Part shown: positions 1-22,136 of the stretch, piece after piece | Position numbering within the stretch: position 1 is the first letter of the stretch | Layout of the letters: every line of letters begins with the position of its first letter | IMG/VR virus record: IMGVR_UViG_3300009703_004110 | Coordinates: 62,001 to 126,000 of that record | Length of the DNA stretch: 64,000 bases | Direction: 5' to 3' (one strand) | The notes under the pieces: generated by a model | Seen by the model: the letters and a program-made list of their open reading frames with translations, nothing else | Database searches by the model: none | Told to the model about the DNA's origin: nothing | Position numbers and translations under genes: made by a program

Positions 1-265
1 TAATAACCACCATATCAAGGCTATCTAATATTTTCTTTTTTTGCTCAAAAGTATAAACCAGATGGTCATTAGTTCCGCGTATCCAGACATTAGTCTTTCT
101 TCCATAATCGCGTCTAAATTTTTTATTTAACGAAAAATCATTAAATCTTATTATTAGATCATGACTATCTATTTTGTGCCCATGACGTTGACCAATTTCG
201 CACGGGCTATTTCCCACGATACAATAATCTTTACGTTTTGAGAATAATTTCTCTATATTTGACAT
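1..265 (-). CDS. GT29 (eukaryote-type sialyltransferase-like) glycosyltransferase, 3'-truncated by window edge; absent from ORF track
   Basis: Manual translation of the minus strand from ATG at 265 (in-frame ATGs also at 307/313): MSNIEKLFSKRKDYCIVGNSPCEIGQRHGHKIDSHDLIIRFNDFSLNKKFRRDYGRKTNVWIRG..., open to base 1. This matches sialylmotif L (CxxVGNS...G..ID.HD.(V/I)IR.N...DVG.KT). Confidence 0.8.
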   Translation of the reverse strand, partial: MSNIEKLFSKRKDYCIVGNSPCEIGQRHGHKIDSHDLIIRFNDFSLNKKFRRDYGRKTNVWIRGTNDHLVYTFEQKKKILDSLDMVVI

Positions 266-322
266 CCGCGGCCCCCACAAGTATTTTGTACTGCAGACTA
301 TAATCATGCTCATTTCAAATAC

Positions 323-898
323 TTAATTTTTTGGGACGGCCTCTATTCTAAGCTCTCCCTTTTTTGTAGTCTCTATCCGAACGATATTGAAATATTCAGT
401 GATAGCTCTAGTCCACCAATCTAAGTCTTTTACTGTGATATGAGAATTTCTACCATTCGGAAGAATCTTCCTAGAAAGCCTGGTGGATATTGTAAAGTAT
501 GCTGCCATATTAGTTAGATAAGCAATATACTCTAAAGTCGTTTTAACTTTGTCCTCTTCGATATGCTCCATTACATCCATACAAACTACAAGATCTGCTC
601 TGGATGGAAGACTTGAAAATGATTTAATACACGGATCAAAGTTGGATATCTTTAAATTCAATGGCTCATCTAAAATAAAGTCAGCTATTTCAAAGGCAAT
701 AGAGAGGGTCGCCTTTCCGCATCCATAATCTAATAGGCTTTCTACATTATATCTGTCTATAATATCATGAACTGCTTTGAAATGCTTATAAGAGTGCCTG
801 CCGTACGCCAGCCGGTTTATATGAAGGTCTTTATTTAACTGTCGTAACTCATCTGATACTAAAATACCAAGTTCTAGTTTCTGGCCATTTATTATCAC
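323..898 (-). CDS. Class I SAM-dependent methyltransferase
   Basis: LLDYGCGKATL motif I and ADLVVCMDVMEHIEE; GTG start overlapping the gmd stop, with GGAG SD. Confidence 0.8.
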   Translation of the reverse strand: MIINGQKLELGILVSDELRQLNKDLHINRLAYGRHSYKHFKAVHDIIDRYNVESLLDYGCGKATLSIAFEIADFILDEPLNLKISNFDPCIKSFSSLPSRADLVVCMDVMEHIEEDKVKTTLEYIAYLTNMAAYFTISTRLSRKILPNGRNSHITVKDLDWWTRAITEYFNIVRIETTKKGELRIEAVPKN

Positions 899-1884
899 TC
901 TATCTCCGCAAGATCATTTTCATACATCTCTTTTAATAAGTCTTCACAACTATATGAAGGCTCCCAGCCAAGAACTTTCCTCGCCTTTGTCGCGTCACCC
1001 TTTAGAAAGTTAACCTCTGATGGCCTCATAAATCTTTCATCAACCCTGTAAACATCTTCGACCTTTAATCCGGCCAGATCCTCGCAGACGTACTTGAACA
1101 TTTCCCCAATGGACAGTGGGTTTCCTGTGGCAATTACATAATCATCCGGGACTTCTTGCTGTAACATCATCCATTGGGCCTCAACATAGTCCTTTGCGTG
1201 CCCTTCGTCACGGAAGGCTTCAAGGTTGCCCATTCTAACATGCTCCGCTAGACCACTTTTAACTGCCGCAATACCTTTGGTAATTTTTCTTGTTGCAAAG
1301 TCATGACCACGTCTTGGAGAGCTATGATTAAATAAGATGCCATTTGATGCATGTAATCCATACGCTTCTCTATAGTTAACTACAGCATAAAATGCCGCAG
1401 CCTTTGCTATGGCATATGGTGAACGAGGATGGAATCGGCTGTCTTCATTCAATCCCGCCTCTGGACAGTTAATACCACCAAATAACTCAGAGGTGCTAGC
1501 TTGATAGAACTTTGTGTGCGGTGACAACTGCTTAATCAAATCAAGCTGCATAATTACTGCCTCACCATCAACTCGGAAGGTTGTGATAGGCTCTTTGAAT
1601 GATTGACCAACGTGAGACATTGCGGCCAGATTGTAATATTCATCAGGCTGCCATTCGATCAGCAGCTTTCCAATAAAAGATGAATCTGTTATATCGGAAT
1701 AAAGCAGCTTAAAATTTTCATGCTTCAATATCTTCTCTAGATTCTCTAGTCCATTGTTAACAGACTTTCGCCTGGTTATTCCTATAACCGTGTATCCCTT
1801 CTTTAATAAAAATTCCGATAGGTATGAGCCATCCTGCCCTGCGCATCCGGTCACAATAGCCGTAAGGCTTTTACTTCTTTCCAT
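895..1884 (-). CDS. gmd: GDP-mannose 4,6-dehydratase
   Basis: TAIVTGCAGQDGSYL, YNLAAMSHV, FYQASTSELFG, SPYAIAK, NGILFNHSSPRRG..FATRKIT, MGNL.A.RD.GHAKDYV. Start revised to the ATG at 1884 (MERSKS). Confidence 0.95.
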   Translation of the reverse strand: MERSKSLTAIVTGCAGQDGSYLSEFLLKKGYTVIGITRRKSVNNGLENLEKILKHENFKLLYSDITDSSFIGKLLIEWQPDEYYNLAAMSHVGQSFKEPITTFRVDGEAVIMQLDLIKQLSPHTKFYQASTSELFGGINCPEAGLNEDSRFHPRSPYAIAKAAAFYAVVNYREAYGLHASNGILFNHSSPRRGHDFATRKITKGIAAVKSGLAEHVRMGNLEAFRDEGHAKDYVEAQWMMLQQEVPDDYVIATGNPLSIGEMFKYVCEDLAGLKVEDVYRVDERFMRPSEVNFLKGDATKARKVLGWEPSYSCEDLLKEMYENDLAEIE

Positions 1885-2602
1885 TAATAATCTCCAATAA
1901 TAACTTTTTCCAAATCTCTCTATTAAAATTTGTTTTAGCATGGCAACTTCTACATAAAGTAATTAAATTAAGAACATTGTTATTAAACTTATCATAATCT
2001 ATATGATGTACATCATATCCATTGTTTTTACATATTGCACAAGAAAAATTATCTCTTTTTCGAACTGAAGTTCTTAAGTTATCGTTCCACTCTTTTGGTC
2101 TTTCTAAAAATGAAACTCCACCTTTCCAAGAGCCGTTTTTATCTCCCGAAACTTTATCACCATTTTGATACATTGGATTGTTTGAGCCAGAGACATCTGT
2201 ATGATTTTCAGATATAAGCTTTTTTGATTCAAAAGAATGAGATTTTCCATAAAAGCTATTTTTTGTCCCAGATTGAGCCTCTGATAATTTAGCTTTTATT
2301 AAAGAGGCCTTATATTCTCCATGTTTTTTTACATAAGATCCCTTGTTTGATTCTGATAAAATCTTTTTTGTTTCTTCCGAATGCTTTTTCCCATAAAACG
2401 GATTATTTTCTCCACTTACTTTTTTAGATAACGCCTCTTTAAATTCGTCCGTTCTTTTTCTTCCAGTATTTGTAAATTTTGAAGCACAGCTTCTGCTGCA
2501 AAAACGCCTAACTCTCAATCTTGCAGTATCTCGTACTTCAAAATTTAATCCACATTCTTCACAGATTTTTACAATATATTTTTTTATAAGTCGATTACTC
2601 AT
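1871..2602 (-). mobile_element. Free-standing HNH homing endonuclease with N-terminal Zn ribbon and NUMOD3 repeats
   Basis: CEECG...FCSRSC; SGENNPFYGKKHSEETK and SGTKNSFYGKSHSFESK (NUMOD3); CAIC...DVHHIDYDKFNN...NLITLCRSCH. AAGGA SD before ATG 2602. Confidence 0.85.
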
Positions 2603-11374: not shown

Positions 11375-12167
11375 AGCCAAACTCACGCAGTCTGAGCCAT
11401 TCATCACCGTACTTCCAGTCTATTCCTCGTTTTGGTTCCCATATATCAAACCAAGGACCACCATTAGTGAAGTGAACGTTCTTAGCTTCTAAGCTTTCGG
11501 GAGAATGGCCTGGTAACCAATTCCACTCCTCTGGCAATTCACCTATATCTTTATCCTCTAGCCACTTCAGATTATGTAACCAAGTTCCTGGCTTAGTGCT
11601 AACATCAGCCGCTGTTAAATTGTGATGAGCCTGATGGCCGCAATTCCAGAGCATAACACTGGACCAGTTTTTTCTACTATAAAATGTTTGTGGGCATCCG
11701 TAGAGCTTGACAGCAACTTTGCCACCATCCTCAAACTGATGCTTAACACACTGTAAAGCTGGCGCGTCTGCAGTAGCGTAGCGATCAAATATCTCACACG
11801 GGTCGCTGCGAAAATACATATCGTTATCCATAAACAAAGCAAACCCTTCGTGCTGGTTTAAAAAAGGAACTAAAAATCTTGAAAAACTGAACTCTGTCGA
11901 ATACGGCTTACCATCGAACCTGTCTACCATATGGTCTACTTTATTTTGCCCCCATACAGTGGATTCTACATGCGGAACCCTAAAATATAATCCACTTCTT
12001 CTTAAGCTTGTCTGATTTAAGGTCACAATATTAAGCGGCCTAGAGGCGTGTCTTAGGATTGAGTCTGTTAAAACTTCAGAGGCATGATGATCTCTTGGGT
12101 CATAACCGATGTATATTGTATCTAGCTTTCTAACTTCTTTATCATTCTGATTAATGACTTTTCTCAT
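11364..12167 (-). CDS. GT8-like glycosyltransferase
   Basis: IYIGYDPRD, STEFSFSRFLVP, ALFMDNDMYF, RKNWSSVMLWNCGH, WNWL, HFTNGGPW. Confidence 0.75.
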   Translation of the reverse strand: MRKVINQNDKEVRKLDTIYIGYDPRDHHASEVLTDSILRHASRPLNIVTLNQTSLRRSGLYFRVPHVESTVWGQNKVDHMVDRFDGKPYSTEFSFSRFLVPFLNQHEGFALFMDNDMYFRSDPCEIFDRYATADAPALQCVKHQFEDGGKVAVKLYGCPQTFYSRKNWSSVMLWNCGHQAHHNLTAADVSTKPGTWLHNLKWLEDKDIGELPEEWNWLPGHSPESLEAKNVHFTNGGPWFDIWEPKRGIDWKYGDEWLRLREFGYGE

Positions 12168-12954
12168 CAGCAATTCTCCTTACTATAGACTCTATAATTT
12201 CGAGTGTTTGCGCGGGATCACGAGTTTTATATGCAAAGCCCGTAGGTTTAATAGCGTCATATAAAGCAGCATCATTACCAAATTCTTCGCATCTATCACC
12301 TACGAACCATATTTTTTCATAGTCATCGAAATGCTTTAGAACATATGTTTTATCCCAGCCTGACGGATAAATATCAAACGAGGTATTTCCACCTAGTACC
12401 GCCGTTACTCTGCTATCTATCCTTTTAAGCCTTCTATTTAACCTTCCCAAAAAACGAACTCTAAGGCCGGTCTCTTGATCTAATTCTCTAAACTGTTCTC
12501 GTTGATCTGTATTAGCATTTCTACCGATCGGGCACCAATTTATCATTGAGCCTCTAAGCTCTAAAAAATTACCCGTTAAGGGGATTAAAAGCCCTTTCTC
12601 TTTGACAAGACATTTTTGTAAGTCAAAAATAATGGCCATTATTCCGGCCATTACTTCAGCACCTAAATGCTCTTCCATATTATTGAAATAAATCTCTTCA
12701 TAGTCGTCGATCTTATCTTTATGCTTATAAACCTTTGTGCCATTACATGGTAAAATTATAATTCTATTTAAAAGCATATCTTCAAATACTTGCGGCATTT
12801 GCTCTTGCAAGTAATTATAATCGCTTCCTGAAACTACTCCCACTTCTGCGACCCAAAGCAACTCCATTAATGCTTTAGCTATTTCATCTCCCATTTGGCC
12901 GCGCGCAGGTGTTAATGTGCCGTCCATGTCGAACAGCACCAGATGATCGGACAT
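12151..12954 (-). CDS. Phosphomannomutase, eukaryote-type HAD family (PMM2/Sec53-like)
   Basis: LFDMDGTLTPAR, VSGSD, ELRGSMINWCPIGRNA, GGNTSFDIYP.GWDKTY.L, FVGD....GND..LY. GGAG SD before ATG 12954. Confidence 0.9.
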   Translation of the reverse strand: MSDHLVLFDMDGTLTPARGQMGDEIAKALMELLWVAEVGVVSGSDYNYLQEQMPQVFEDMLLNRIIILPCNGTKVYKHKDKIDDYEEIYFNNMEEHLGAEVMAGIMAIIFDLQKCLVKEKGLLIPLTGNFLELRGSMINWCPIGRNANTDQREQFRELDQETGLRVRFLGRLNRRLKRIDSRVTAVLGGNTSFDIYPSGWDKTYVLKHFDDYEKIWFVGDRCEEFGNDAALYDAIKPTGFAYKTRDPAQTLEIIESIVRRIADEKSH

Positions 12955-12955
12955 C

Positions 12956-13426
12956 TTAACTCCTAGATTTAGCAACCAGTTCACTACTGCTCTGAACCTT
13001 TCCACCGCCAACATTCCACAACATGTAGATGCCAAGTTCATTACAGACCTTTACTTCTGGTACGTTATCAGATTTTCTGTCGCCACCATTGGCAAAGAAA
13101 TCTGGACATAGTCTTCTTAGTGCTTCACAAACTGAACCATCCGAGTCATCCACATGGCTCACATGCACTACGCCTCTTATCGCAGATAATATTTCTGCTC
13201 TCTCCTCAAAAGACATAAATACATAACCTTTCTTTCTCATTAGCCACTCATCACTGTTGGCCACAACAATAACTTCCTTGCCACCCTTAGCGGCATCTAA
13301 AATCATTTGAACGTGGCCAACGTGTATTGGGTCAAATCCACCGGAAACAACTACCGAACTCTGTTCGTACCCGTCATAAGTCTTTTTGGTTTCCCAACTT
13401 CCATCATCATTTAACGGCATCATCAT
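12956..13426 (-). CDS. HxGH-family cytidylyl/adenylyltransferase (TagD / RfaE domain II-like)
   Basis: VVVSGGFDPIHVGH, VVANSDEWL.RKKG, FANGGDR, GGGKVQSSS. Confidence 0.8.
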   Translation of the reverse strand: MMMPLNDDGSWETKKTYDGYEQSSVVVSGGFDPIHVGHVQMILDAAKGGKEVIVVANSDEWLMRKKGYVFMSFEERAEILSAIRGVVHVSHVDDSDGSVCEALRRLCPDFFANGGDRKSDNVPEVKVCNELGIYMLWNVGGGKVQSSSELVAKSRS

Positions 13427-15712: not shown

Positions 15713-16501
15713 TCACAAAATTTCTATATTTTTATTACATTCAGACAGCCACCACGCCACTTCTGTAAAGGTGCTCATATACGTACCTAATATAGTCTTG
15801 CCCTTTGCCAATAAGTATAGGTCAATAATGTCATCTTCAATAGTTCTATCTTCTGAGTTGGAGTAGACTATTATTCTATCTCCAAAAACTTCTTCTAGTC
15901 GCCTTATATGACTTAATGAATCTGAGGCCACAAAGAATGTAACGCTCGAATCAAACTGCTTCATTCTTGAAATAAATTTATTGATATCAAAGTTTTTTCT
16001 TCTTGAGCTTCCGGCTATATCATACCACGTTCTCATATGTACTGAGATGGTCTCTTTATCAAAGCGCCGCTTATAGAATTTGATTATCTTTCTTTGATAT
16101 CTTCTTTTTAATTTTATTTGTTTAAAAATATCAATATAGACATCTTGAACTGATTTCGGTATCCTGTTGTATTCTAGATCAATATTTCTTCCGCTCTTAT
16201 TTCCTTTTTTATCTGAGAACTTTGAAAATCCGACTGGCAAATCATCATCATCCATAATAGCCAGCCTCCATGAGTCATAAAATTTAGATCTCTTCGGAAA
16301 CGGCTCTGTAACCTCAATGTCATTTTCAAAAAAGTCTGAAAATCTACTTTCTGGCCTATGAGGTGTTCTGCCGTTCTTGTCAATATAGATATTGATGATT
16401 GGTCTCCAAAAAATACCATGACTTTTCGGCTCCAATCTCATACATGAAGCTAGGGCCTTTAATCTGTTCGCAATACCTGCATCTTCTGACGCTATTATCA
16501 T
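15713..16501 (-). CDS. NodZ/GT23/O-fucosyltransferase-like glycosyltransferase
   Basis: GIANRL, SVHMRT, FFVASDS, IDLYLLAK...GTYMSTF. Start revised to ATG 16501. Confidence 0.65.
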   Translation of the reverse strand: MIIASEDAGIANRLKALASCMRLEPKSHGIFWRPIINIYIDKNGRTPHRPESRFSDFFENDIEVTEPFPKRSKFYDSWRLAIMDDDDLPVGFSKFSDKKGNKSGRNIDLEYNRIPKSVQDVYIDIFKQIKLKRRYQRKIIKFYKRRFDKETISVHMRTWYDIAGSSRRKNFDINKFISRMKQFDSSVTFFVASDSLSHIRRLEEVFGDRIIVYSNSEDRTIEDDIIDLYLLAKGKTILGTYMSTFTEVAWWLSECNKNIEIL

Positions 16502-16502
16502 T

Positions 16503-17162
16503 TTACACCTGAAAAATTTTATAACTTGAGATATCTTTATACTTGTATGAACCACCACAGTCCTCGTTAACCTCTGGTAACGAATCCAAAAGAACGATGC
16601 CTCGTGCGGCCTGCTCTGGCGGCATATACATGTTCCAACCGAGGACTGTTAGCTCTTCCATACTATCATGCGGTATTCTTTCGTCTCTTCCTTCGTATCT
16701 GGCTTGTTTGAACCACTTCACAGCATCAGCATCATCGGTCAAAATCATCCCGCCCTTTGTTATTGGTAGAATTTTCTTAATATGAAAAGATAGGCATTGA
16801 TATGTGCCTGGGATGTACATTCCTTTAGTAAACCTTGTTGCCGAATCAATAATTGGATATGGGTTTAGTTGATATAAGCCCCACCATTCTAAATCTGTAA
16901 ACTTTGGCTTGCAGCCGGTATGAATGATTACCCCTGGAACAGAAACGTATGTCTTACCCGGCACCTCTATTTCTCCAGATGCACCAAGATATTTCATTGA
17001 TAAAAATAGGGCGTTAGTGCAACTATCGACTGATACTGCATATTTGCTTCCGGCATATGCCGCTACTTTCTGTTCAAAGATATCAACTATATCCCAAGGA
17101 TCATTAACTTCATAGCCTTCTTTGAGCAAAATTTCTTTTGCTACTTCTAAATCAGAATACAT
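16503..17162 (-). CDS. Short (219 aa) DegT/DnrJ/EryC1/StrS-family PLP enzyme
   Basis: FEQKVAAYAGSKYAVSVDSCTNALFL, IIDSA, SFHIKKILPITKGGMIL, GWNMYM; lacks the usual C-terminal domain. Confidence 0.75.
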   Translation of the reverse strand: MYSDLEVAKEILLKEGYEVNDPWDIVDIFEQKVAAYAGSKYAVSVDSCTNALFLSMKYLGASGEIEVPGKTYVSVPGVIIHTGCKPKFTDLEWWGLYQLNPYPIIDSATRFTKGMYIPGTYQCLSFHIKKILPITKGGMILTDDADAVKWFKQARYEGRDERIPHDSMEELTVLGWNMYMPPEQAARGIVLLDSLPEVNEDCGGSYKYKDISSYKIFQV

Positions 17163-17725
17163 TATAACTTCTCCGAAAACATATGACCTTCAATCGTGGT
17201 AAATTCTAATATATCGAGTGGAAATACTTTAGGATCCAAATCCTTAAAGAGTGTATTTTTGAAGCCCATACTTTTCATATAATCCTCTGATTTAAATTTT
17301 GCTCTATTGAAATTATTTCTGCTCAACATGACGCCGCCCTTGATCATATTTCTAGCTGCCCACTTTTGTACATGTATTTTTAAGTCAGGAGTTGTTGGAA
17401 AACTTCCCATATCGTTGTGACAAAACGCAATAGGAAGGTCGTCTTCATCACTCAGTAGGTTACAGTCTTTTGTAATTACTCGGTCGTGCTCCATTGGATT
17501 AAATAAGTCGTATCCTATGCACCTTTCTCTTCCATACATTTCGCATAAAAGGTCTAATGACACGCATCTATTGCTTCCAAGCAAAACTATATACCCGGCA
17601 TCTGGTATTTCCAATTTCGAGACCAGCCTGTCTATTATCTTATAACCGTAATATTCTTTGCCATAATTACCTACTACGGCATGCTCCTCTGGAGAATCAA
17701 ACCAATACTTATATTCTTTATTCAT
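17162..17725 (-). CDS. Hypothetical protein, possibly methyltransferase-like
   Basis: IVLLGSNR...CIGYDL weakly resembles SAM motif I/II; the coupled ORF boundaries support a real gene. Confidence 0.4.
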   Translation of the reverse strand: MNKEYKYWFDSPEEHAVVGNYGKEYYGYKIIDRLVSKLEIPDAGYIVLLGSNRCVSLDLLCEMYGRERCIGYDLFNPMEHDRVITKDCNLLSDEDDLPIAFCHNDMGSFPTTPDLKIHVQKWAARNMIKGGVMLSRNNFNRAKFKSEDYMKSMGFKNTLFKDLDPKVFPLDILEFTTIEGHMFSEKL

Positions 17726-18383
17726 TTAAATCTCCTAATAAACTGTAATATTCTCCGATTATAAATCTATTTTTCTTTGTAGCTGTAACGGCCGAATATG
17801 TTGGGTCATATTTACTTAATGGTAAGATTCTAAAATCGAAACTAATTCTAGTTGCCCCTGTTTCATTAACTTTATTTCCATGATTACATTTATTTCCATC
17901 AAAGATTAGGCAGTCACCATACTTCATATTAACAGGGCCGAAATCACCAAGACCAGGTGCGCTTTCTACCCACACTGTATTGGTATCAAACGCATTTGTT
18001 ATTGGTATAATAAAATTGATTTCTCCATCTGGATGTAAATGAAGCGCGTCACTATCATGATGCCAAGTTGAAACAGCCTTGTTATTTGGGAATTGTATTC
18101 TATAAGATGGGAACGATTGATATAGAAAGGACTTCTCTGCTGATAAATTAATTATTACTTCTGATACAAACCTTTCATAAGCTTCTCTAATCTCGTTCCA
18201 TCCGGAATTTAATTTCTCATAGAACTTATTATGTAGAATAGAGTGCGTATCATGTCCAATGCCTTTTACGCCATTCTCCTCCGTGAGCTGAGTATGCAAT
18301 GTAGATAAGTCTGAAACTTGATACAAATCAAGAAGAAGTTCTTGAAACTTGTAAATGTTTGTATCGTATTTTATTATCCTCAT
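17718..18383 (-). CDS. Fe(II)/2OG-type oxygenase, StrG-like
   Basis: WHHDSD, HPDGEINFIIPIT, TNTVWVES, FDGNKCNHGNKVN.TG.TRISFDFR. Confidence 0.65.
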   Translation of the reverse strand: MRIIKYDTNIYKFQELLLDLYQVSDLSTLHTQLTEENGVKGIGHDTHSILHNKFYEKLNSGWNEIREAYERFVSEVIINLSAEKSFLYQSFPSYRIQFPNNKAVSTWHHDSDALHLHPDGEINFIIPITNAFDTNTVWVESAPGLGDFGPVNMKYGDCLIFDGNKCNHGNKVNETGATRISFDFRILPLSKYDPTYSAVTATKKNRFIIGEYYSLLGDLNE

Positions 18384-18391
18384 CTTTCTTC

Positions 18392-19339
18392 CTATATTTG
18401 AAACTCGTGATTCGTTTCTTTTATAAATTCTTTTATTGTATGAAAAGCTAAATCATCAGGGTCTGTAAAGTGCTTTACTTTCTCATAATTCATATGAGCA
18501 TATCTAAGCATTTTATTGTATTTTGCTGGAGATAGTTTTAACAGAATATCTTTGAGCTCATCTATTGTATCAAATATTAAGACTCCTCCTATATCGAAGA
18601 AATCTCCTATACTTGGACATCCTTTGTAAATTGGAATAGTTCCTGTTGCAAAACAATCGAATATTTTCTCAGTCATATTGTAATCTATAAATCCATTCTC
18701 AACCACAAGAGAAAACATATACGGATTAATAGTCGGACCTTTTTCTGGCAAATACGGGCCTACTCCAGAGCCATAATAATCAACAAAATCAATACTTGGT
18801 TCTTTTATAAGCGCATTGTATATAATCCGTCTCTCTTTATGCCCCGGAGCATATTTTTTATTCGAAAACATATAAGATACAAGCTTATTTTTATCATGCA
18901 TAGCTATATTTGAATAGCCAAGGGCAGGGCATGAAGGCATAAAAAATCTAGTATTCTTTGGAAATTTTTCAAGCAGCTCTCTATCGTGTGTTAGGATTAA
19001 ATCGAAACGATGATGTATTCTTTCTATCTCTTCATGCACATGATTAATTAGATACTTAGGCTCTCCTAGCATGGCGACTCTAAATCCGGCCCCATATCCG
19101 TCGATCATCTTATTGTTTATATATTTATCAGTATGGACGGTTATTCCGTCCCAATCCGTCTTGAAAAAAAGATACTGTACATACTTCGGTTTTCTTATTT
19201 CCTTCCCGCCACTATAGCACTCTGACTCAACAATGCTCGCACCTTTGAATCCAGTGTCTATCATATTTATAACATATCTATCTTTGGTACAATACCTTTT
19301 GGTCCATTGCTTTAAAGACCTTAGTTGAACTCGATCCAC
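18392..19339 (-). CDS. GT10 (alpha-1,3-fucosyltransferase-like) glycosyltransferase
   Basis: KLVSYMFSNK; YMFSLVVENG..DYNMTEKIFDCFATGTIPIYKG. Confidence 0.75.
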   Translation of the reverse strand: MDRVQLRSLKQWTKRYCTKDRYVINMIDTGFKGASIVESECYSGGKEIRKPKYVQYLFFKTDWDGITVHTDKYINNKMIDGYGAGFRVAMLGEPKYLINHVHEEIERIHHRFDLILTHDRELLEKFPKNTRFFMPSCPALGYSNIAMHDKNKLVSYMFSNKKYAPGHKERRIIYNALIKEPSIDFVDYYGSGVGPYLPEKGPTINPYMFSLVVENGFIDYNMTEKIFDCFATGTIPIYKGCPSIGDFFDIGGVLIFDTIDELKDILLKLSPAKYNKMLRYAHMNYEKVKHFTDPDDLAFHTIKEFIKETNHEFQI

Positions 19340-20253
19340 TATACGCCCCTAACATTTGGATAGCTTTCTTTAAACCACTTACATGTTTCGGCCAGACCTT
19401 CACTTAGTTTAGTATATTTAAAGTCAGGATATAACTCCAAGAACTTCGTATTATTAGACGGCTTTCTGTGTTGACCTTTCGGCATAGAAATATCCCATTT
19501 GATTTTTCCATCAAATTCCATCTCCTTCATAATATATCCGGCCACCTCTTTGATGCTGTATTCTTTGGTAAATCCAATGTTTACTGGATTTGAGTCTTCG
19601 TAATTATCTAGCAACCATAGCAGGGACCTTGCCGTGTCTTTAGCATAGGTAAATTCTCTGAGTGGCGTTCCATCGCCCCAAAGGATTATCTCGTCCCTTC
19701 CTTCTAATTTTGCCTCATGAATCTTTCTAATCATAGATGGGATTACGTGACTACATACTTTGTCAAAATTATCATTAGCGCCATATAAGTTATTCGGTAT
19801 TGCAACTGTAAAGTTACACCCCCATTCTTTTCTATATGCTAAAGACTGAATATGCAGCATTCTTTTCGCATAGGCATATCCAAAGTTTGACTCATGTGGA
19901 GGTCCCTCATGAACACTAGTTTCTGTTAAAGGATACGATGCAGCATCCGGATAAATACAGGTGCTCAGAAGTGACAAAACCTTCTCTACTTTTGTTATTC
20001 TAGCTGCTTCCAAAAGATTTGTGTTCATCAAAATGTTATCTCGAAAGAAGGTTCCGACATAATCCATGTTGCCTTTAACGCCACCAACTCTAGCTGCTAA
20101 GTGAATTATTCTTTCGACTTGATTTTCTTCAATCATGGCTACACATTGCTCGAAGCTTGTTAGGTCATAGTCAGATGACCCTACCCTTAAAACATCATAA
20201 TCACCAAAAGCGTATCCCACCATTCCTGTTCCGCCAGTAATAAGAGTTGTCAT
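19339..20253 (-). CDS. fcl: GDP-4-keto-6-deoxymannose epimerase/reductase (Fcl/WcaG; could be ColC)
   Basis: ITGGTGMVG, HLAARVGG, LSTCIYP, YAYAKR, PNNLYG.NDNF, HVIP.MIRK, WGDG.PLREF. Confidence 0.85.
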   Translation of the reverse strand: MTTLITGGTGMVGYAFGDYDVLRVGSSDYDLTSFEQCVAMIEENQVERIIHLAARVGGVKGNMDYVGTFFRDNILMNTNLLEAARITKVEKVLSLLSTCIYPDAASYPLTETSVHEGPPHESNFGYAYAKRMLHIQSLAYRKEWGCNFTVAIPNNLYGANDNFDKVCSHVIPSMIRKIHEAKLEGRDEIILWGDGTPLREFTYAKDTARSLLWLLDNYEDSNPVNIGFTKEYSIKEVAGYIMKEMEFDGKIKWDISMPKGQHRKPSNNTKFLELYPDFKYTKLSEGLAETCKWFKESYPNVRGV

Positions 20254-20254
20254 T

Positions 20255-21418
20255 TTATTCTCCCAAGGTAACTTGGTTTATGATTTCAGACACCATAAAT
20301 ACATCCGCATCAGTTAATGCGTGATGATTTGGAATATAAAATCCATAATCATTTATCAAGTCACAGTTTTTAAGTTCGTTAATTCCGTATTTTTTAATCC
20401 AAAATGGACTTCTACCTATTGAACCAGCAATTAATGGCCTTACTTCTATATTATTGCTTCTTAAGGCAGAAACAATTTTATTTCTCTTTTTAGAGACAAC
20501 CGGATATGCAAAATTAGATACAAAATCACCTGGACGCTCTAACGTCGATAAAAGATTTCCTTTTATTAATCTATTATAAACATAAAAATTACGCCTTCTT
20601 TGTGATTTATATTCAAAAATTTTATCTAGCTGTCTAAGCCCAAGAAAAGCCTGAAGATCTGTTGGTCTCAGATTAAATCCTGGGTAATAAAAAGTATATA
20701 GGCAGTCAAAATCATTAATGCCCCATTCTCCCCTTAGCCTCTGCTGAGTCTCAGTTGATAAATTTCTATCCCATCCATGACTTCTTAGGGAGACCAATAT
20801 TTCATACAGCTCTTCATCATCCGTAGAGATCATCCCGCCTTCAATTGTGCTTATGTGATGGCCATAAAATAATGAGAAAATTGACACCTTTCCGTACGTT
20901 CCCAACTGTACTCCCTGATACTCTGCACCAGTACTCTCTGCCACATCTTCTATCAGGACAACATCATACTCTTTACAAAGCGCCTGGATCTTTTCCATTT
21001 CCGGTACAAGACCTAATACAGAAACCAATATCATTCCTGCCGGCTCATGCTCTATAAATAATTGCTCAAGATGCTCTAAATCTACAGATAGATCTGATAA
21101 ATTGCAATCACATAATATCGGCTCTAATCCTATTTGCATACAACTACTGACATCCGTAACCCATCCAAGACCAGGTACAACTATCTTTTTATTTTTAAAG
21201 TATCCGCCCTCTAGTAGTCCATATAAGCTAAGAAGTATAGCAGAAGAGCCTGAGTTTACAAATACACTATGCTTTACACCTAGTAGTTCAGACCACTTGG
21301 CCTCAAACTCTTCAGTTAACTTATGCATAGTCAAACGAGGAACGGGATCTTGCAATAGCCATGCAGCAAGAGCGTTCGTATCTTCTCGGCTTATTGTATC
21401 GCTTGCAAGTTTAATCAT
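20255..21418 (-). CDS. colD: GDP-4-keto-6-deoxy-D-mannose 3-dehydratase-like PLP enzyme (ColD type)
   Basis: 387 aa; His replaces the Schiff-base Lys in FSLFYGHHISTIEGG; also EDVAESTGA, TDDEELYEILVSLRSHGWDRNL, PGFNLRP, as I recall the ColD/WbdK pattern. Confidence 0.75.
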   Translation of the reverse strand: MIKLASDTISREDTNALAAWLLQDPVPRLTMHKLTEEFEAKWSELLGVKHSVFVNSGSSAILLSLYGLLEGGYFKNKKIVVPGLGWVTDVSSCMQIGLEPILCDCNLSDLSVDLEHLEQLFIEHEPAGMILVSVLGLVPEMEKIQALCKEYDVVLIEDVAESTGAEYQGVQLGTYGKVSIFSLFYGHHISTIEGGMISTDDEELYEILVSLRSHGWDRNLSTETQQRLRGEWGINDFDCLYTFYYPGFNLRPTDLQAFLGLRQLDKIFEYKSQRRRNFYVYNRLIKGNLLSTLERPGDFVSNFAYPVVSKKRNKIVSALRSNNIEVRPLIAGSIGRSPFWIKKYGINELKNCDLINDYGFYIPNHHALTDADVFMVSEIINQVTLGE

Positions 21419-21428
21419 TCAAACTCCT

Positions 21429-22136
21429 TTAAATCCATTTAAAAACATAGTCAAACTCTACGTTTCCAACACATGTTGCGCCCAAATTCTCCAGAAATTT
21501 TCCAGAAGCAAAAGGCTCTTGCTTTATTTTACGCGCCCTTAACTTTTCTTCTGGCAATTGTTCTATCACAATTACTGGCTTACTTATTTTAATAGTTTTT
21601 ATTGCTCCATGTAATACGTCAAGCTCATATCCATCTACATCGATTTTTATATAATCAACATTTCTAAGCTTAAAATGATCTAGTGGCAGAATCGGCATTC
21701 TTCCCTCTAAAATATCTCCACTGTACTTGATTGTTTTGGTAATAGAGTTACCTTGCATTGAGCCTATAAAACCATAATGTGCGCCTAAGCCACATGGATA
21801 TATTGTCACATTCGAAGTATCTACATTTTTTGCCAATAATGGCAGCCACTTCCATCTTGGTTCAAATGCAAAGACATGATCAAATTCTTGTCCAAGGTGT
21901 CTGCACCACTCTCCAAATCTGGCTCCAATGTCCAGCGCTATTCCTCTGCCTTCACAATGATCCAGACTAAGCTGCCTTTGCTTTATTTGACCGGGACCCC
22001 TACAGACGTCTGCCTTAATATTCGTCTTTTTAAGATAGGCCGATTGCTTGTAAAGATCTTGCTTGGTGATGATCTGATCTCTCATATAAGTATAAGATCC
22101 GAGATCTTCTATCGTATAGGGATTCACATTAAACAT
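21429..22136 (-). CDS. FkbM-family methyltransferase
   Basis: ALDIGARFGEW, VFAFEP, LDHFKL.NVDYIKIDVDGYE..VLHGA. Confidence 0.8.
   Translation of the reverse strand: MFNVNPYTIEDLGSYTYMRDQIITKQDLYKQSAYLKKTNIKADVCRGPGQIKQRQLSLDHCEGRGIALDIGARFGEWCRHLGQEFDHVFAFEPRWKWLPLLAKNVDTSNVTIYPCGLGAHYGFIGSMQGNSITKTIKYSGDILEGRMPILPLDHFKLRNVDYIKIDVDGYELDVLHGAIKTIKISKPVIVIEQLPEEKLRARKIKQEPFASGKFLENLGATCVGNVEFDYVFKWI

What the first reader, a model, noticed from the sequence alone, without database searches (positions are those of the whole stretch)
18392..21418. Apparent GDP-colitose (3,6-dideoxyhexose) pathway in a virus
Seen: the PLP enzyme has FYGHHISTIEGG (His, not Lys) and follows the ColD pattern along its length. 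It is coupled to an Fcl/ColC-like reductase and then a GT10, with gmd and PMM elsewhere in the island and a NodZ/GT23-like GT nearby. Known: Gmd + ColD + ColC give GDP-L-colitose, the fucose mimic of E. coli O55/O111 and V. cholerae O139 antigens. Inference: colitose transferred by fucosyltransferase-type enzymes, together with a GT29 acid sugar, could produce Lewis/sialyl-Lewis-like epitopes. I do not recall a described viral colitose pathway, but could not search.
Basis: partly seen in the sequence, partly recalled or inferred. Interest (0 to 1): 0.75.

Follow-up and report, generated by a model that had tools for sequence, protein, structure and literature searches.

The report
Phage-encoded GDP-colitose sugar pathway
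A 332-kb tailed jumbo phage carries the enzymes that in bacteria such as E. coli O55 turn GDP-mannose into the rare sugar colitose, next to fucosyltransferase-type enzymes. The same gene cassette recurs in hundreds of viral contigs and in two cultured cyanophages, where nobody has named it.

Summary
Window 20255-21418, 19339-20253 and 18392-19339 (all minus strand) are three tightly packed genes: a DegT-fold PLP/PMP enzyme with His in place of the catalytic Lys, an Fcl/ColC-family epimerase-reductase, and a GT10-type glycosyltransferase. The host record is a real tailed jumbo phage.

The PLP enzyme is of the ColD type, not E1:
- It groups with E. coli O55 ColD against RfbH/E1 (support 100/96).
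- It lacks all four E1 iron-sulfur cysteines.
- The genome has no CDP-glucose genes and no E3-type reductase domain.

Its relatives sit beside gmd and fcl, and in two archaeal MAGs they are fused to Gmd.

The reductase cannot be told apart from a plain GDP-fucose synthase, and it is the only one in the genome. GDP-fucose and GDP-colitose are therefore probably both made.

The pathway is not unique to this virus. The order GT10-Fcl-ColD-Gmd is the commonest among 80 IMG/VR contigs examined. Cultured cyanophages S-CAM7 and ACG-2014f carry gmd-fcl-colD. I found no paper that describes a viral colitose pathway.

The Lewis-like epitope idea was not tested. Verdict: a new member of a known kind, of moderate interest.

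The parts
20255..21418 (-). ColD-type GDP-4-keto-6-deoxy-D-mannose 3-dehydratase (387 aa), a PLP/PMP enzyme with His187 in place of the Schiff-base Lys
   Evidence: Pfam DegT 206.7 bits. Best solved match is E. coli O55 ColD at 1e-52, against E1 at 4e-36. Tree places it on the ColD side with support 100/96. None of the four E1 Fe-S cysteines is present. It matches all 48 conserved ColD-side columns.
19339..20253 (-). Fcl/ColC-family GDP-4-keto-(3,)6-deoxymannose epimerase/4-reductase (304 aa)
   Evidence: Human GDP-fucose synthase 2.5e-79, E. coli Fcl 3e-44. The S/C/Y/K/H pentad is conserved, as in both E. coli Fcl and ColC. Its start codon lies one base after the ColD stop. It is the only Fcl-family gene in the genome.
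18392..19339 (-). GT10-type (alpha-1,3/4-fucosyltransferase family) glycosyltransferase, 315 aa from GTG; an alternative ATG start lies at 19264
   Evidence: Pfam PF00852 29.9 bits against cut-off 23.9. The family profile hits H. pylori FucT at 6e-18, plant FucTA at 1.3e-14 and FUT9 at 4.8e-10. E93, R170, E224 and K225 are invariant. The GTG start overlaps the Fcl stop. Homologues accompany ColD in 43 of 80 viral loci.
895..1941 (-). GDP-mannose 4,6-dehydratase (Gmd), first step of the pathway
   Evidence: Pfam GDP_Man_Dehyd 358 bits over the full length. TIGR01472 357.8 bits. 46% identical to E. coli Gmd.
12151..13041 (-). Eukaryote-type phosphomannomutase (HAD-IIB), overlapping an RfaE-domain-II-like nucleotidyltransferase at 12956-13426
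   Evidence: Pfam PMM 129 bits. NCBIfam rfaE_dom_II 60 bits. No canonical ManC in the genome.
15713..16558 (-). Possible second GDP-fucose-type transferase (GT23/GT65-like), 281 aa
   Evidence: Sub-threshold Pfam O-FucT hit, E = 0.0047. Family profile hits NodZ at 6.8e-4 and POFUT1 at 3e-3. Conserved in related islands.
17718..18383 (-). 2OG-Fe(II)-oxygenase-like protein (221 aa); in the related metagenome islands its homologue directly follows the Fcl gene
   Evidence: NCBIfam 'sporadic carbohydrate cluster 2OG-Fe(II) oxygenase' 47.6 bits, below cut-off. 51-52% identical homologues lie right after Fcl in L017-L022.
21429..22136 (-). FkbM-family methyltransferase immediately upstream of ColD; a possible sugar O-methylase
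   Evidence: Pfam Methyltransf_21 49.6 bits and TIGR01444 60.6 bits. The role is inferred from position only.
2..313 (-). GT29-like (sialyltransferase-motif) protein; the ORF runs off the window start (C1:61627-62313)
   Evidence: PF00777 35.6 bits against cut-off 23, matching profile positions 51-109 only.

Best explanation
The three genes, together with Gmd 18 kb away in the same one-strand glycan island, most likely form a phage-encoded GDP-L-colitose branch of the GDP-mannose pathway.

Proposed steps:
1. The host supplies GDP-mannose, because the phage has PMM but no ManC.
2. Gmd oxidises and dehydrates it to GDP-4-keto-6-deoxy-D-mannose.
3. The ColD-type enzyme removes the C3 hydroxyl. 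It uses PMP, with His187 as the acid/base where aminotransferases have Lys. It has no iron-sulfur cluster and needs no partner reductase, and its PMP would be regenerated from glutamate. The product is GDP-4-keto-3,6-dideoxy-D-mannose.
4. The single Fcl/ColC-family enzyme epimerises C5 and reduces C4 with NAD(P)H, giving GDP-L-colitose. The same enzyme acting on whatever keto-sugar escapes ColD would give GDP-L-fucose.
5. The translationally coupled GT10-type transferase, and perhaps the GT23/65-like ORF, then place colitose and/or fucose on an unknown acceptor.

Shown here: gene identities, catalytic residues, phylogenetic placement, gene coupling, and the recurrent cassette in other viruses. 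Inferred: substrate, product and donor used.
For: Enzyme type:
- His187 aligns with ColD His188.
- A careful ML tree gives ((E. coli O55 ColD clade),(40 ColD-like sequences including the window)) at 100/96, apart from three RfbH/E1 sequences and from Lys aminotransferases (quick tree of 99 rows).
- The E1-invariant Cys193/251/253/261 are Ala/Arg/Leu/Leu in the window protein.
- All 48 conserved ColD-side columns are kept, including nine that differ from E1.
- The protein is 387 aa, against 388 for ColD and 432-445 for E1.

Genome content:
- No NTP_transferase, so neither RfbF nor ManC.
- Only three extended SDRs: Gmd, a GalE/TviC-like enzyme and the Fcl-like enzyme, so no CDP-glucose dehydratase.
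- No E3-type NAD_binding_1 domain.

GDP linkage by context:
- Of 79 GTDB loci with a relative, 49 have an Fcl-like gene and 37 a Gmd-like gene within 6 kb.
- Two archaeal MAGs carry Gmd and ColD in one long open frame, in L051 and L071.
- Of 80 IMG/VR loci, 79 have the HH motif, 62 have Fcl, 60 have Gmd and 43 have a homologue of this GT10. The commonest order is GT10-Fcl-ColD-Gmd.

Coupling: ColD stop, one base, then the Fcl ATG; the Fcl stop overlaps the GT10 GTG.

Reductase: the full Fcl/ColC catalytic pentad is present.

Transferase: the GT10 profile match and invariant catalytic residues.

Precedent: the E. coli O55 cluster has colC-colD with a GT11 'fucosyltransferase'. WbgN and human FUT2 each transfer both L-Col and L-Fuc, so donor supply decides which sugar is used (PMC11987014).
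Against: - There is no biochemical evidence at all.
- The window protein is only 31% identical to the one characterised ColD. It lies in a sister clade, not inside the E. coli ColD clade.
- NCBIfam has no ColD model. The top NCBIfam hit is RfbH, far below its cut-off (182.6 against 423).
- The reductase is closer to human and E. coli GDP-fucose synthases than to E. coli ColC, and nothing distinguishes ColC from Fcl.
- The GDP-contact residues of ColD could not be checked against the primary papers, which are not held.
- The donor preference of the GT10 enzyme is unknown, and the acceptor is unknown.
Confidence: 0.7

Rival explanations
1. The module makes only GDP-L-fucose (Gmd plus Fcl), as already described for cyanophages and chloroviruses. 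On this reading the His-bearing DegT protein does something else (an aminotransferase, a 4-keto-sugar isomerase or a regulator) or is catalytically dead.
For: The reductase's closest characterised relatives are true GDP-fucose synthases. GDP-fucose pathways and fucosyltransferases are known in cyanophage S-SCSM1 (PMC9602691). The window protein is only 31% identical to ColD.
Against: The Lys-to-His replacement is the defining switch from aminotransferase to 3-dehydratase (PMC8987622). It is kept in all 92 ColD-side sequences, with 48 strongly conserved columns, so the protein is under selection for that chemistry. It is sandwiched between gmd and fcl in most viral cassettes, and fused to Gmd in two archaeal MAGs.
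Confidence: 0.12
2. The enzyme does deoxygenate C3 of a GDP-4-keto sugar, but the end product is a different 3,6-dideoxy- or further modified hexose. Examples are a sugar without C5 epimerisation, or one that is methylated or hydroxylated by the neighbouring FkbM methyltransferase and 2OG/PhyH oxygenases. The transferred sugar would then not be colitose itself.
For: An FkbM methyltransferase lies immediately upstream. A conserved 2OG-oxygenase-like ORF and a PhyH-family ORF travel with ColD-Fcl in related islands. A conserved short Lys-bearing DegT-like protein is also present.
Against: The reductase keeps Cys and His, the epimerisation acid/base pair of Fcl/ColC. The minimal recurrent viral cassette is just GT10-Fcl-ColD-Gmd, without those extra genes.
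Confidence: 0.13
3. It is an E1/RfbH-type CDP- or dTDP-4-keto-6-deoxyglucose 3-dehydrase, leading to abequose, paratose, tyvelose or trideoxy sugars. This is what the JGI automatic names and the S-CAM7 annotation suggest.
For: JGI names many relatives 'CDP-6-deoxy-D-xylo-4-hexulose-3-dehydrase'. The best NCBIfam hit is RfbH. The S-CAM7 homologue is annotated as a CDP-type dehydrase.
Against: The RfbH score is 182.6 against a cut-off of 423. All four Fe-S cysteines are absent. The tree separates it from E1 at 100/96. The genome has no cytidylyltransferase of the RfbF type, no CDP-glucose dehydratase and no E3 domain. The neighbours are GDP-sugar enzymes.
Confidence: 0.03

Closest known systems
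E. coli O55:H7 / O111 colitose genes: gmd, colC (wbdJ), colD (wbdK) and the GT11 colitosyltransferase WbgN
   Same: The enzyme set and logic are the same: Gmd, a His-bearing cluster-free PMP 3-dehydratase, an Fcl-family epimerase/reductase adjacent to it, and a 'fucosyltransferase-family' GT. ColD is the best solved-structure match.
   Different: Identity to ColD and to ColC is only 31%. The window ColD lies in a separate, almost wholly viral clade. The gene order is colD then fcl rather than colC then colD. The transferase is GT10, not GT11. There is no manC and no wzx/wzy, and the cluster sits in a phage rather than an O-antigen locus.
Cultured cyanomyoviruses S-CAM7 and ACG-2014f
   Same: Both are viral. 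S-CAM7 carries gmd, fcl, a 3-dehydrase and GT11 in a row. In ACG-2014f gp209-gp211 are 45% identical to the window's Gmd, Fcl-like and ColD-like respectively, followed by a GT. Both 3-dehydrases have the GHH motif.
   Different: They are 31-38% identical to the window protein and sit on long branches outside its clade. They use GT11 or another GT rather than GT10. They are annotated 'aminotransferase' or as a CDP-type dehydrase, and no paper I could find discusses colitose.
E1 (RfbH/DdhC) with E3 of Salmonella and Yersinia, and SpnQ-type dTDP-sugar 3-dehydrases
   Same: They share the DegT fold and the His-for-Lys 3-dehydratase chemistry (PMC8987622), and the HH..EGG motif.
   Different: E1 has a [2Fe-2S] cluster on four Cys, a ~30-residue N-terminal extension, needs a reductase, and uses CDP- or dTDP-sugars. 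None of these applies here. Its motif is YPAHHI.MGEGG, against F/Y-F/Y-G/S-HH..T-I/M-EGG on the ColD side.
Virus-encoded GDP-fucose pathways (cyanophage S-SCSM1; chlorovirus PBCV-1 GMD/GMER, the latter from my own knowledge)
   Same: A virus supplies Gmd, an Fcl-type enzyme and fucosyltransferases (PMC9602691).
   Different: Those pathways stop at fucose (or rhamnose). Here a ColD step adds a 3-deoxygenation branch.

Membership tests
ColD (GDP-4-keto-6-deoxy-D-mannose 3-dehydratase) | Fold-type-I DegT/aspartate-aminotransferase-like PLP/PMP enzyme of about 390 aa | tested here: met
   Pfam PF01041 206.7 bits across residues 28-380. The protein is 387 aa, against 388 for E. coli ColD.
ColD (GDP-4-keto-6-deoxy-D-mannose 3-dehydratase) | Catalytic His in place of the Schiff-base Lys | tested here: met
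   H187 aligns with ColD His188 and with the Lys of PerA and ArnB.
ColD (GDP-4-keto-6-deoxy-D-mannose 3-dehydratase) | No [2Fe-2S] binding cysteines (the feature that separates ColD from E1 and SpnQ) | tested here: met
   E1-invariant C193/C251/C253/C261 correspond to A/R/L/L in the window protein.
ColD (GDP-4-keto-6-deoxy-D-mannose 3-dehydratase) | Groups with characterised ColD rather than E1 or aminotransferases in a phylogeny | tested here: met
   The ColD-side split is supported at UFboot 100 / SH-aLRT 96. The window lies in the sister clade to the E. coli ColD clade, at 31% identity.
ColD (GDP-4-keto-6-deoxy-D-mannose 3-dehydratase) | Acts on a GDP-linked 4-keto-6-deoxymannose made by Gmd | tested here: inconclusive
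   Only context supports it. Gmd is in the island. Gmd and Fcl neighbour the gene in 37-62 loci of each 80-locus set, and Gmd-ColD fusions occur. Substrate binding was not tested.
ColD (GDP-4-keto-6-deoxy-D-mannose 3-dehydratase) | Glutamate-dependent PMP regeneration, with release of GDP-4-keto-3,6-dideoxymannose and ammonia | not testable with these tools
   This needs an enzyme assay.
E1 / RfbH (CDP-4-keto-6-deoxyglucose 3-dehydrase) | Curated NCBIfam equivalog score, four Fe-S cysteines, and CDP-glucose pathway genes with an E3 partner | tested here: not met
   NF011936 scores 182.6 against a cut-off of 423. The cysteines are absent. There is no NTP_transferase, no third dehydratase and no NAD_binding_1 domain.
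GDP-L-fucose synthase family (Fcl/GMER, includes ColC) | Extended SDR with Ser-Tyr-Lys plus the Cys/His epimerisation pair | tested here: met
   S/C/Y/K/H are present at E. coli Fcl positions 107/109/136/140/179. Human FX matches at 2.5e-79. NCBIfam Fcl equivalog scores 236.5, below its cut-off of 500.
ColC (GDP-L-colitose synthase) as distinct from Fcl | Any sequence feature or clade that separates ColC from Fcl | tested here: inconclusive
   The catalytic pentad is identical in ColC and Fcl. In an unrooted tree the window protein lies on the same side of a starred split as O55 ColC, not E. coli Fcl. Identity is 31% to both.
GT10 (alpha-1,3/4-fucosyltransferases) | Pfam domain over cut-off; FxxxxENxxxxxYxTEK-type nucleotide-sugar motif; catalytic Glu and Arg | tested here: met
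   PF00852 scores 29.9 against 23.9. The profile of 24 homologues hits H. pylori FucT at 6e-18, plant FucTA at 1.3e-14 and FUT9 at 4.8e-10. E93, R170, E214-N215 and E224-K225 are invariant. Equating these with the published catalytic residues rests on my memory.
GT10 (alpha-1,3/4-fucosyltransferases) | Uses GDP-beta-L-fucose (or colitose) as donor | not testable with these tools
   There is only a precedent from GT11 enzymes: FUT2 and WbgN accept both sugars (PMC11987014).
GT23/GT65 (NodZ, POFUT) for ORF 15713-16558 | Profile match over threshold | tested here: inconclusive
   Pfam O-FucT scores 17 bits against a cut-off of 31.5. Genome scans were negative. The family profile hits NodZ at 6.8e-4 and POFUT1 at 3e-3.

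The most novel reading that the evidence does not exclude
The ColD cassette may belong to a phage-resident lineage of sugar genes that serves cytoplasmic glycosylation of the phage's own virion proteins rather than remodelling of host LPS. The candidate targets are the unannotated 1385- to 3215-aa ORFs that flank the island beside the baseplate gene. The glycan would contain colitose/fucose, Kdo and a nonulosonic acid, by analogy with the fibril glycans of giant viruses.

What fits this reading: the ~45-kb island (C1:50.4-94.3 kb, from the first glycosyltransferases upstream of the window to window 32303) has 10 Pfam-supported glycosyltransferases (E at most 0.001) plus the GT23/65-like ORF. 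It has no ORF with three or more predicted membrane spans, hence no Wzx, Wzy, WaaL or polyprenyl-phosphate transferase candidate.
Probability: 0.2. Interest if true: 0.75.

Novelty: new member of a known kind. Interest (0 to 1): 0.45.

Why it matters
Colitose is known as a terminal antigenic sugar of a few Gram-negative O-antigens, such as E. coli O55/O111 and V. cholerae O139.

The enzymes for it appear to form a large clade made up almost wholly of IMG/VR viral contigs. They are packaged as a four-gene cassette with a fucosyltransferase-type enzyme. Phages would then be a reservoir and vector of rare-sugar biosynthesis, and 3,6-dideoxyhexoses could appear on infected cells or virions in aquatic and subsurface habitats.

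The finding also corrects database labels. The genes are currently called 'aminotransferase' or 'CDP-...-3-dehydrase'.

It gives a directly testable system, because S-CAM7 and ACG-2014f are in culture.

It does not reveal new chemistry. Each enzyme is a recognisable member of a known family.

Tried and rejected
- Megablast of 20 kb of the island against 50,697 phage records gave no match.
- A Pfam Gp23 scan of the genome found nothing, but the controls were silent too, so it is uninformative.
- tblastn with the baseplate protein gave only distant hits, to Bacillus phage G and mycobacteriophages, so it offers no host clue.
- NodZ and O-FucT genome scans were negative.
No fold comparison or active-site model was made.
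- The primary ColD structure papers are not held in the library. GDP-contact residues could therefore not be checked against the literature, and I used family conservation instead.
- Sequencing-run search found only two DNA runs from subsurface metagenomes and no RNA, so expression was not examined and read laying was not used.
- Promoter- and terminator-like sites are not enriched over shuffles.
- E1/CDP pathway reading: rejected (see rivals).
- The idea that the 219-aa DegT-like ORF is a broken aminotransferase pseudogene: rejected, because it is 70% identical and of the same length in related islands.
- The second SDR upstream of the window is GalE/TviC-like, not a GDP-sugar reductase.

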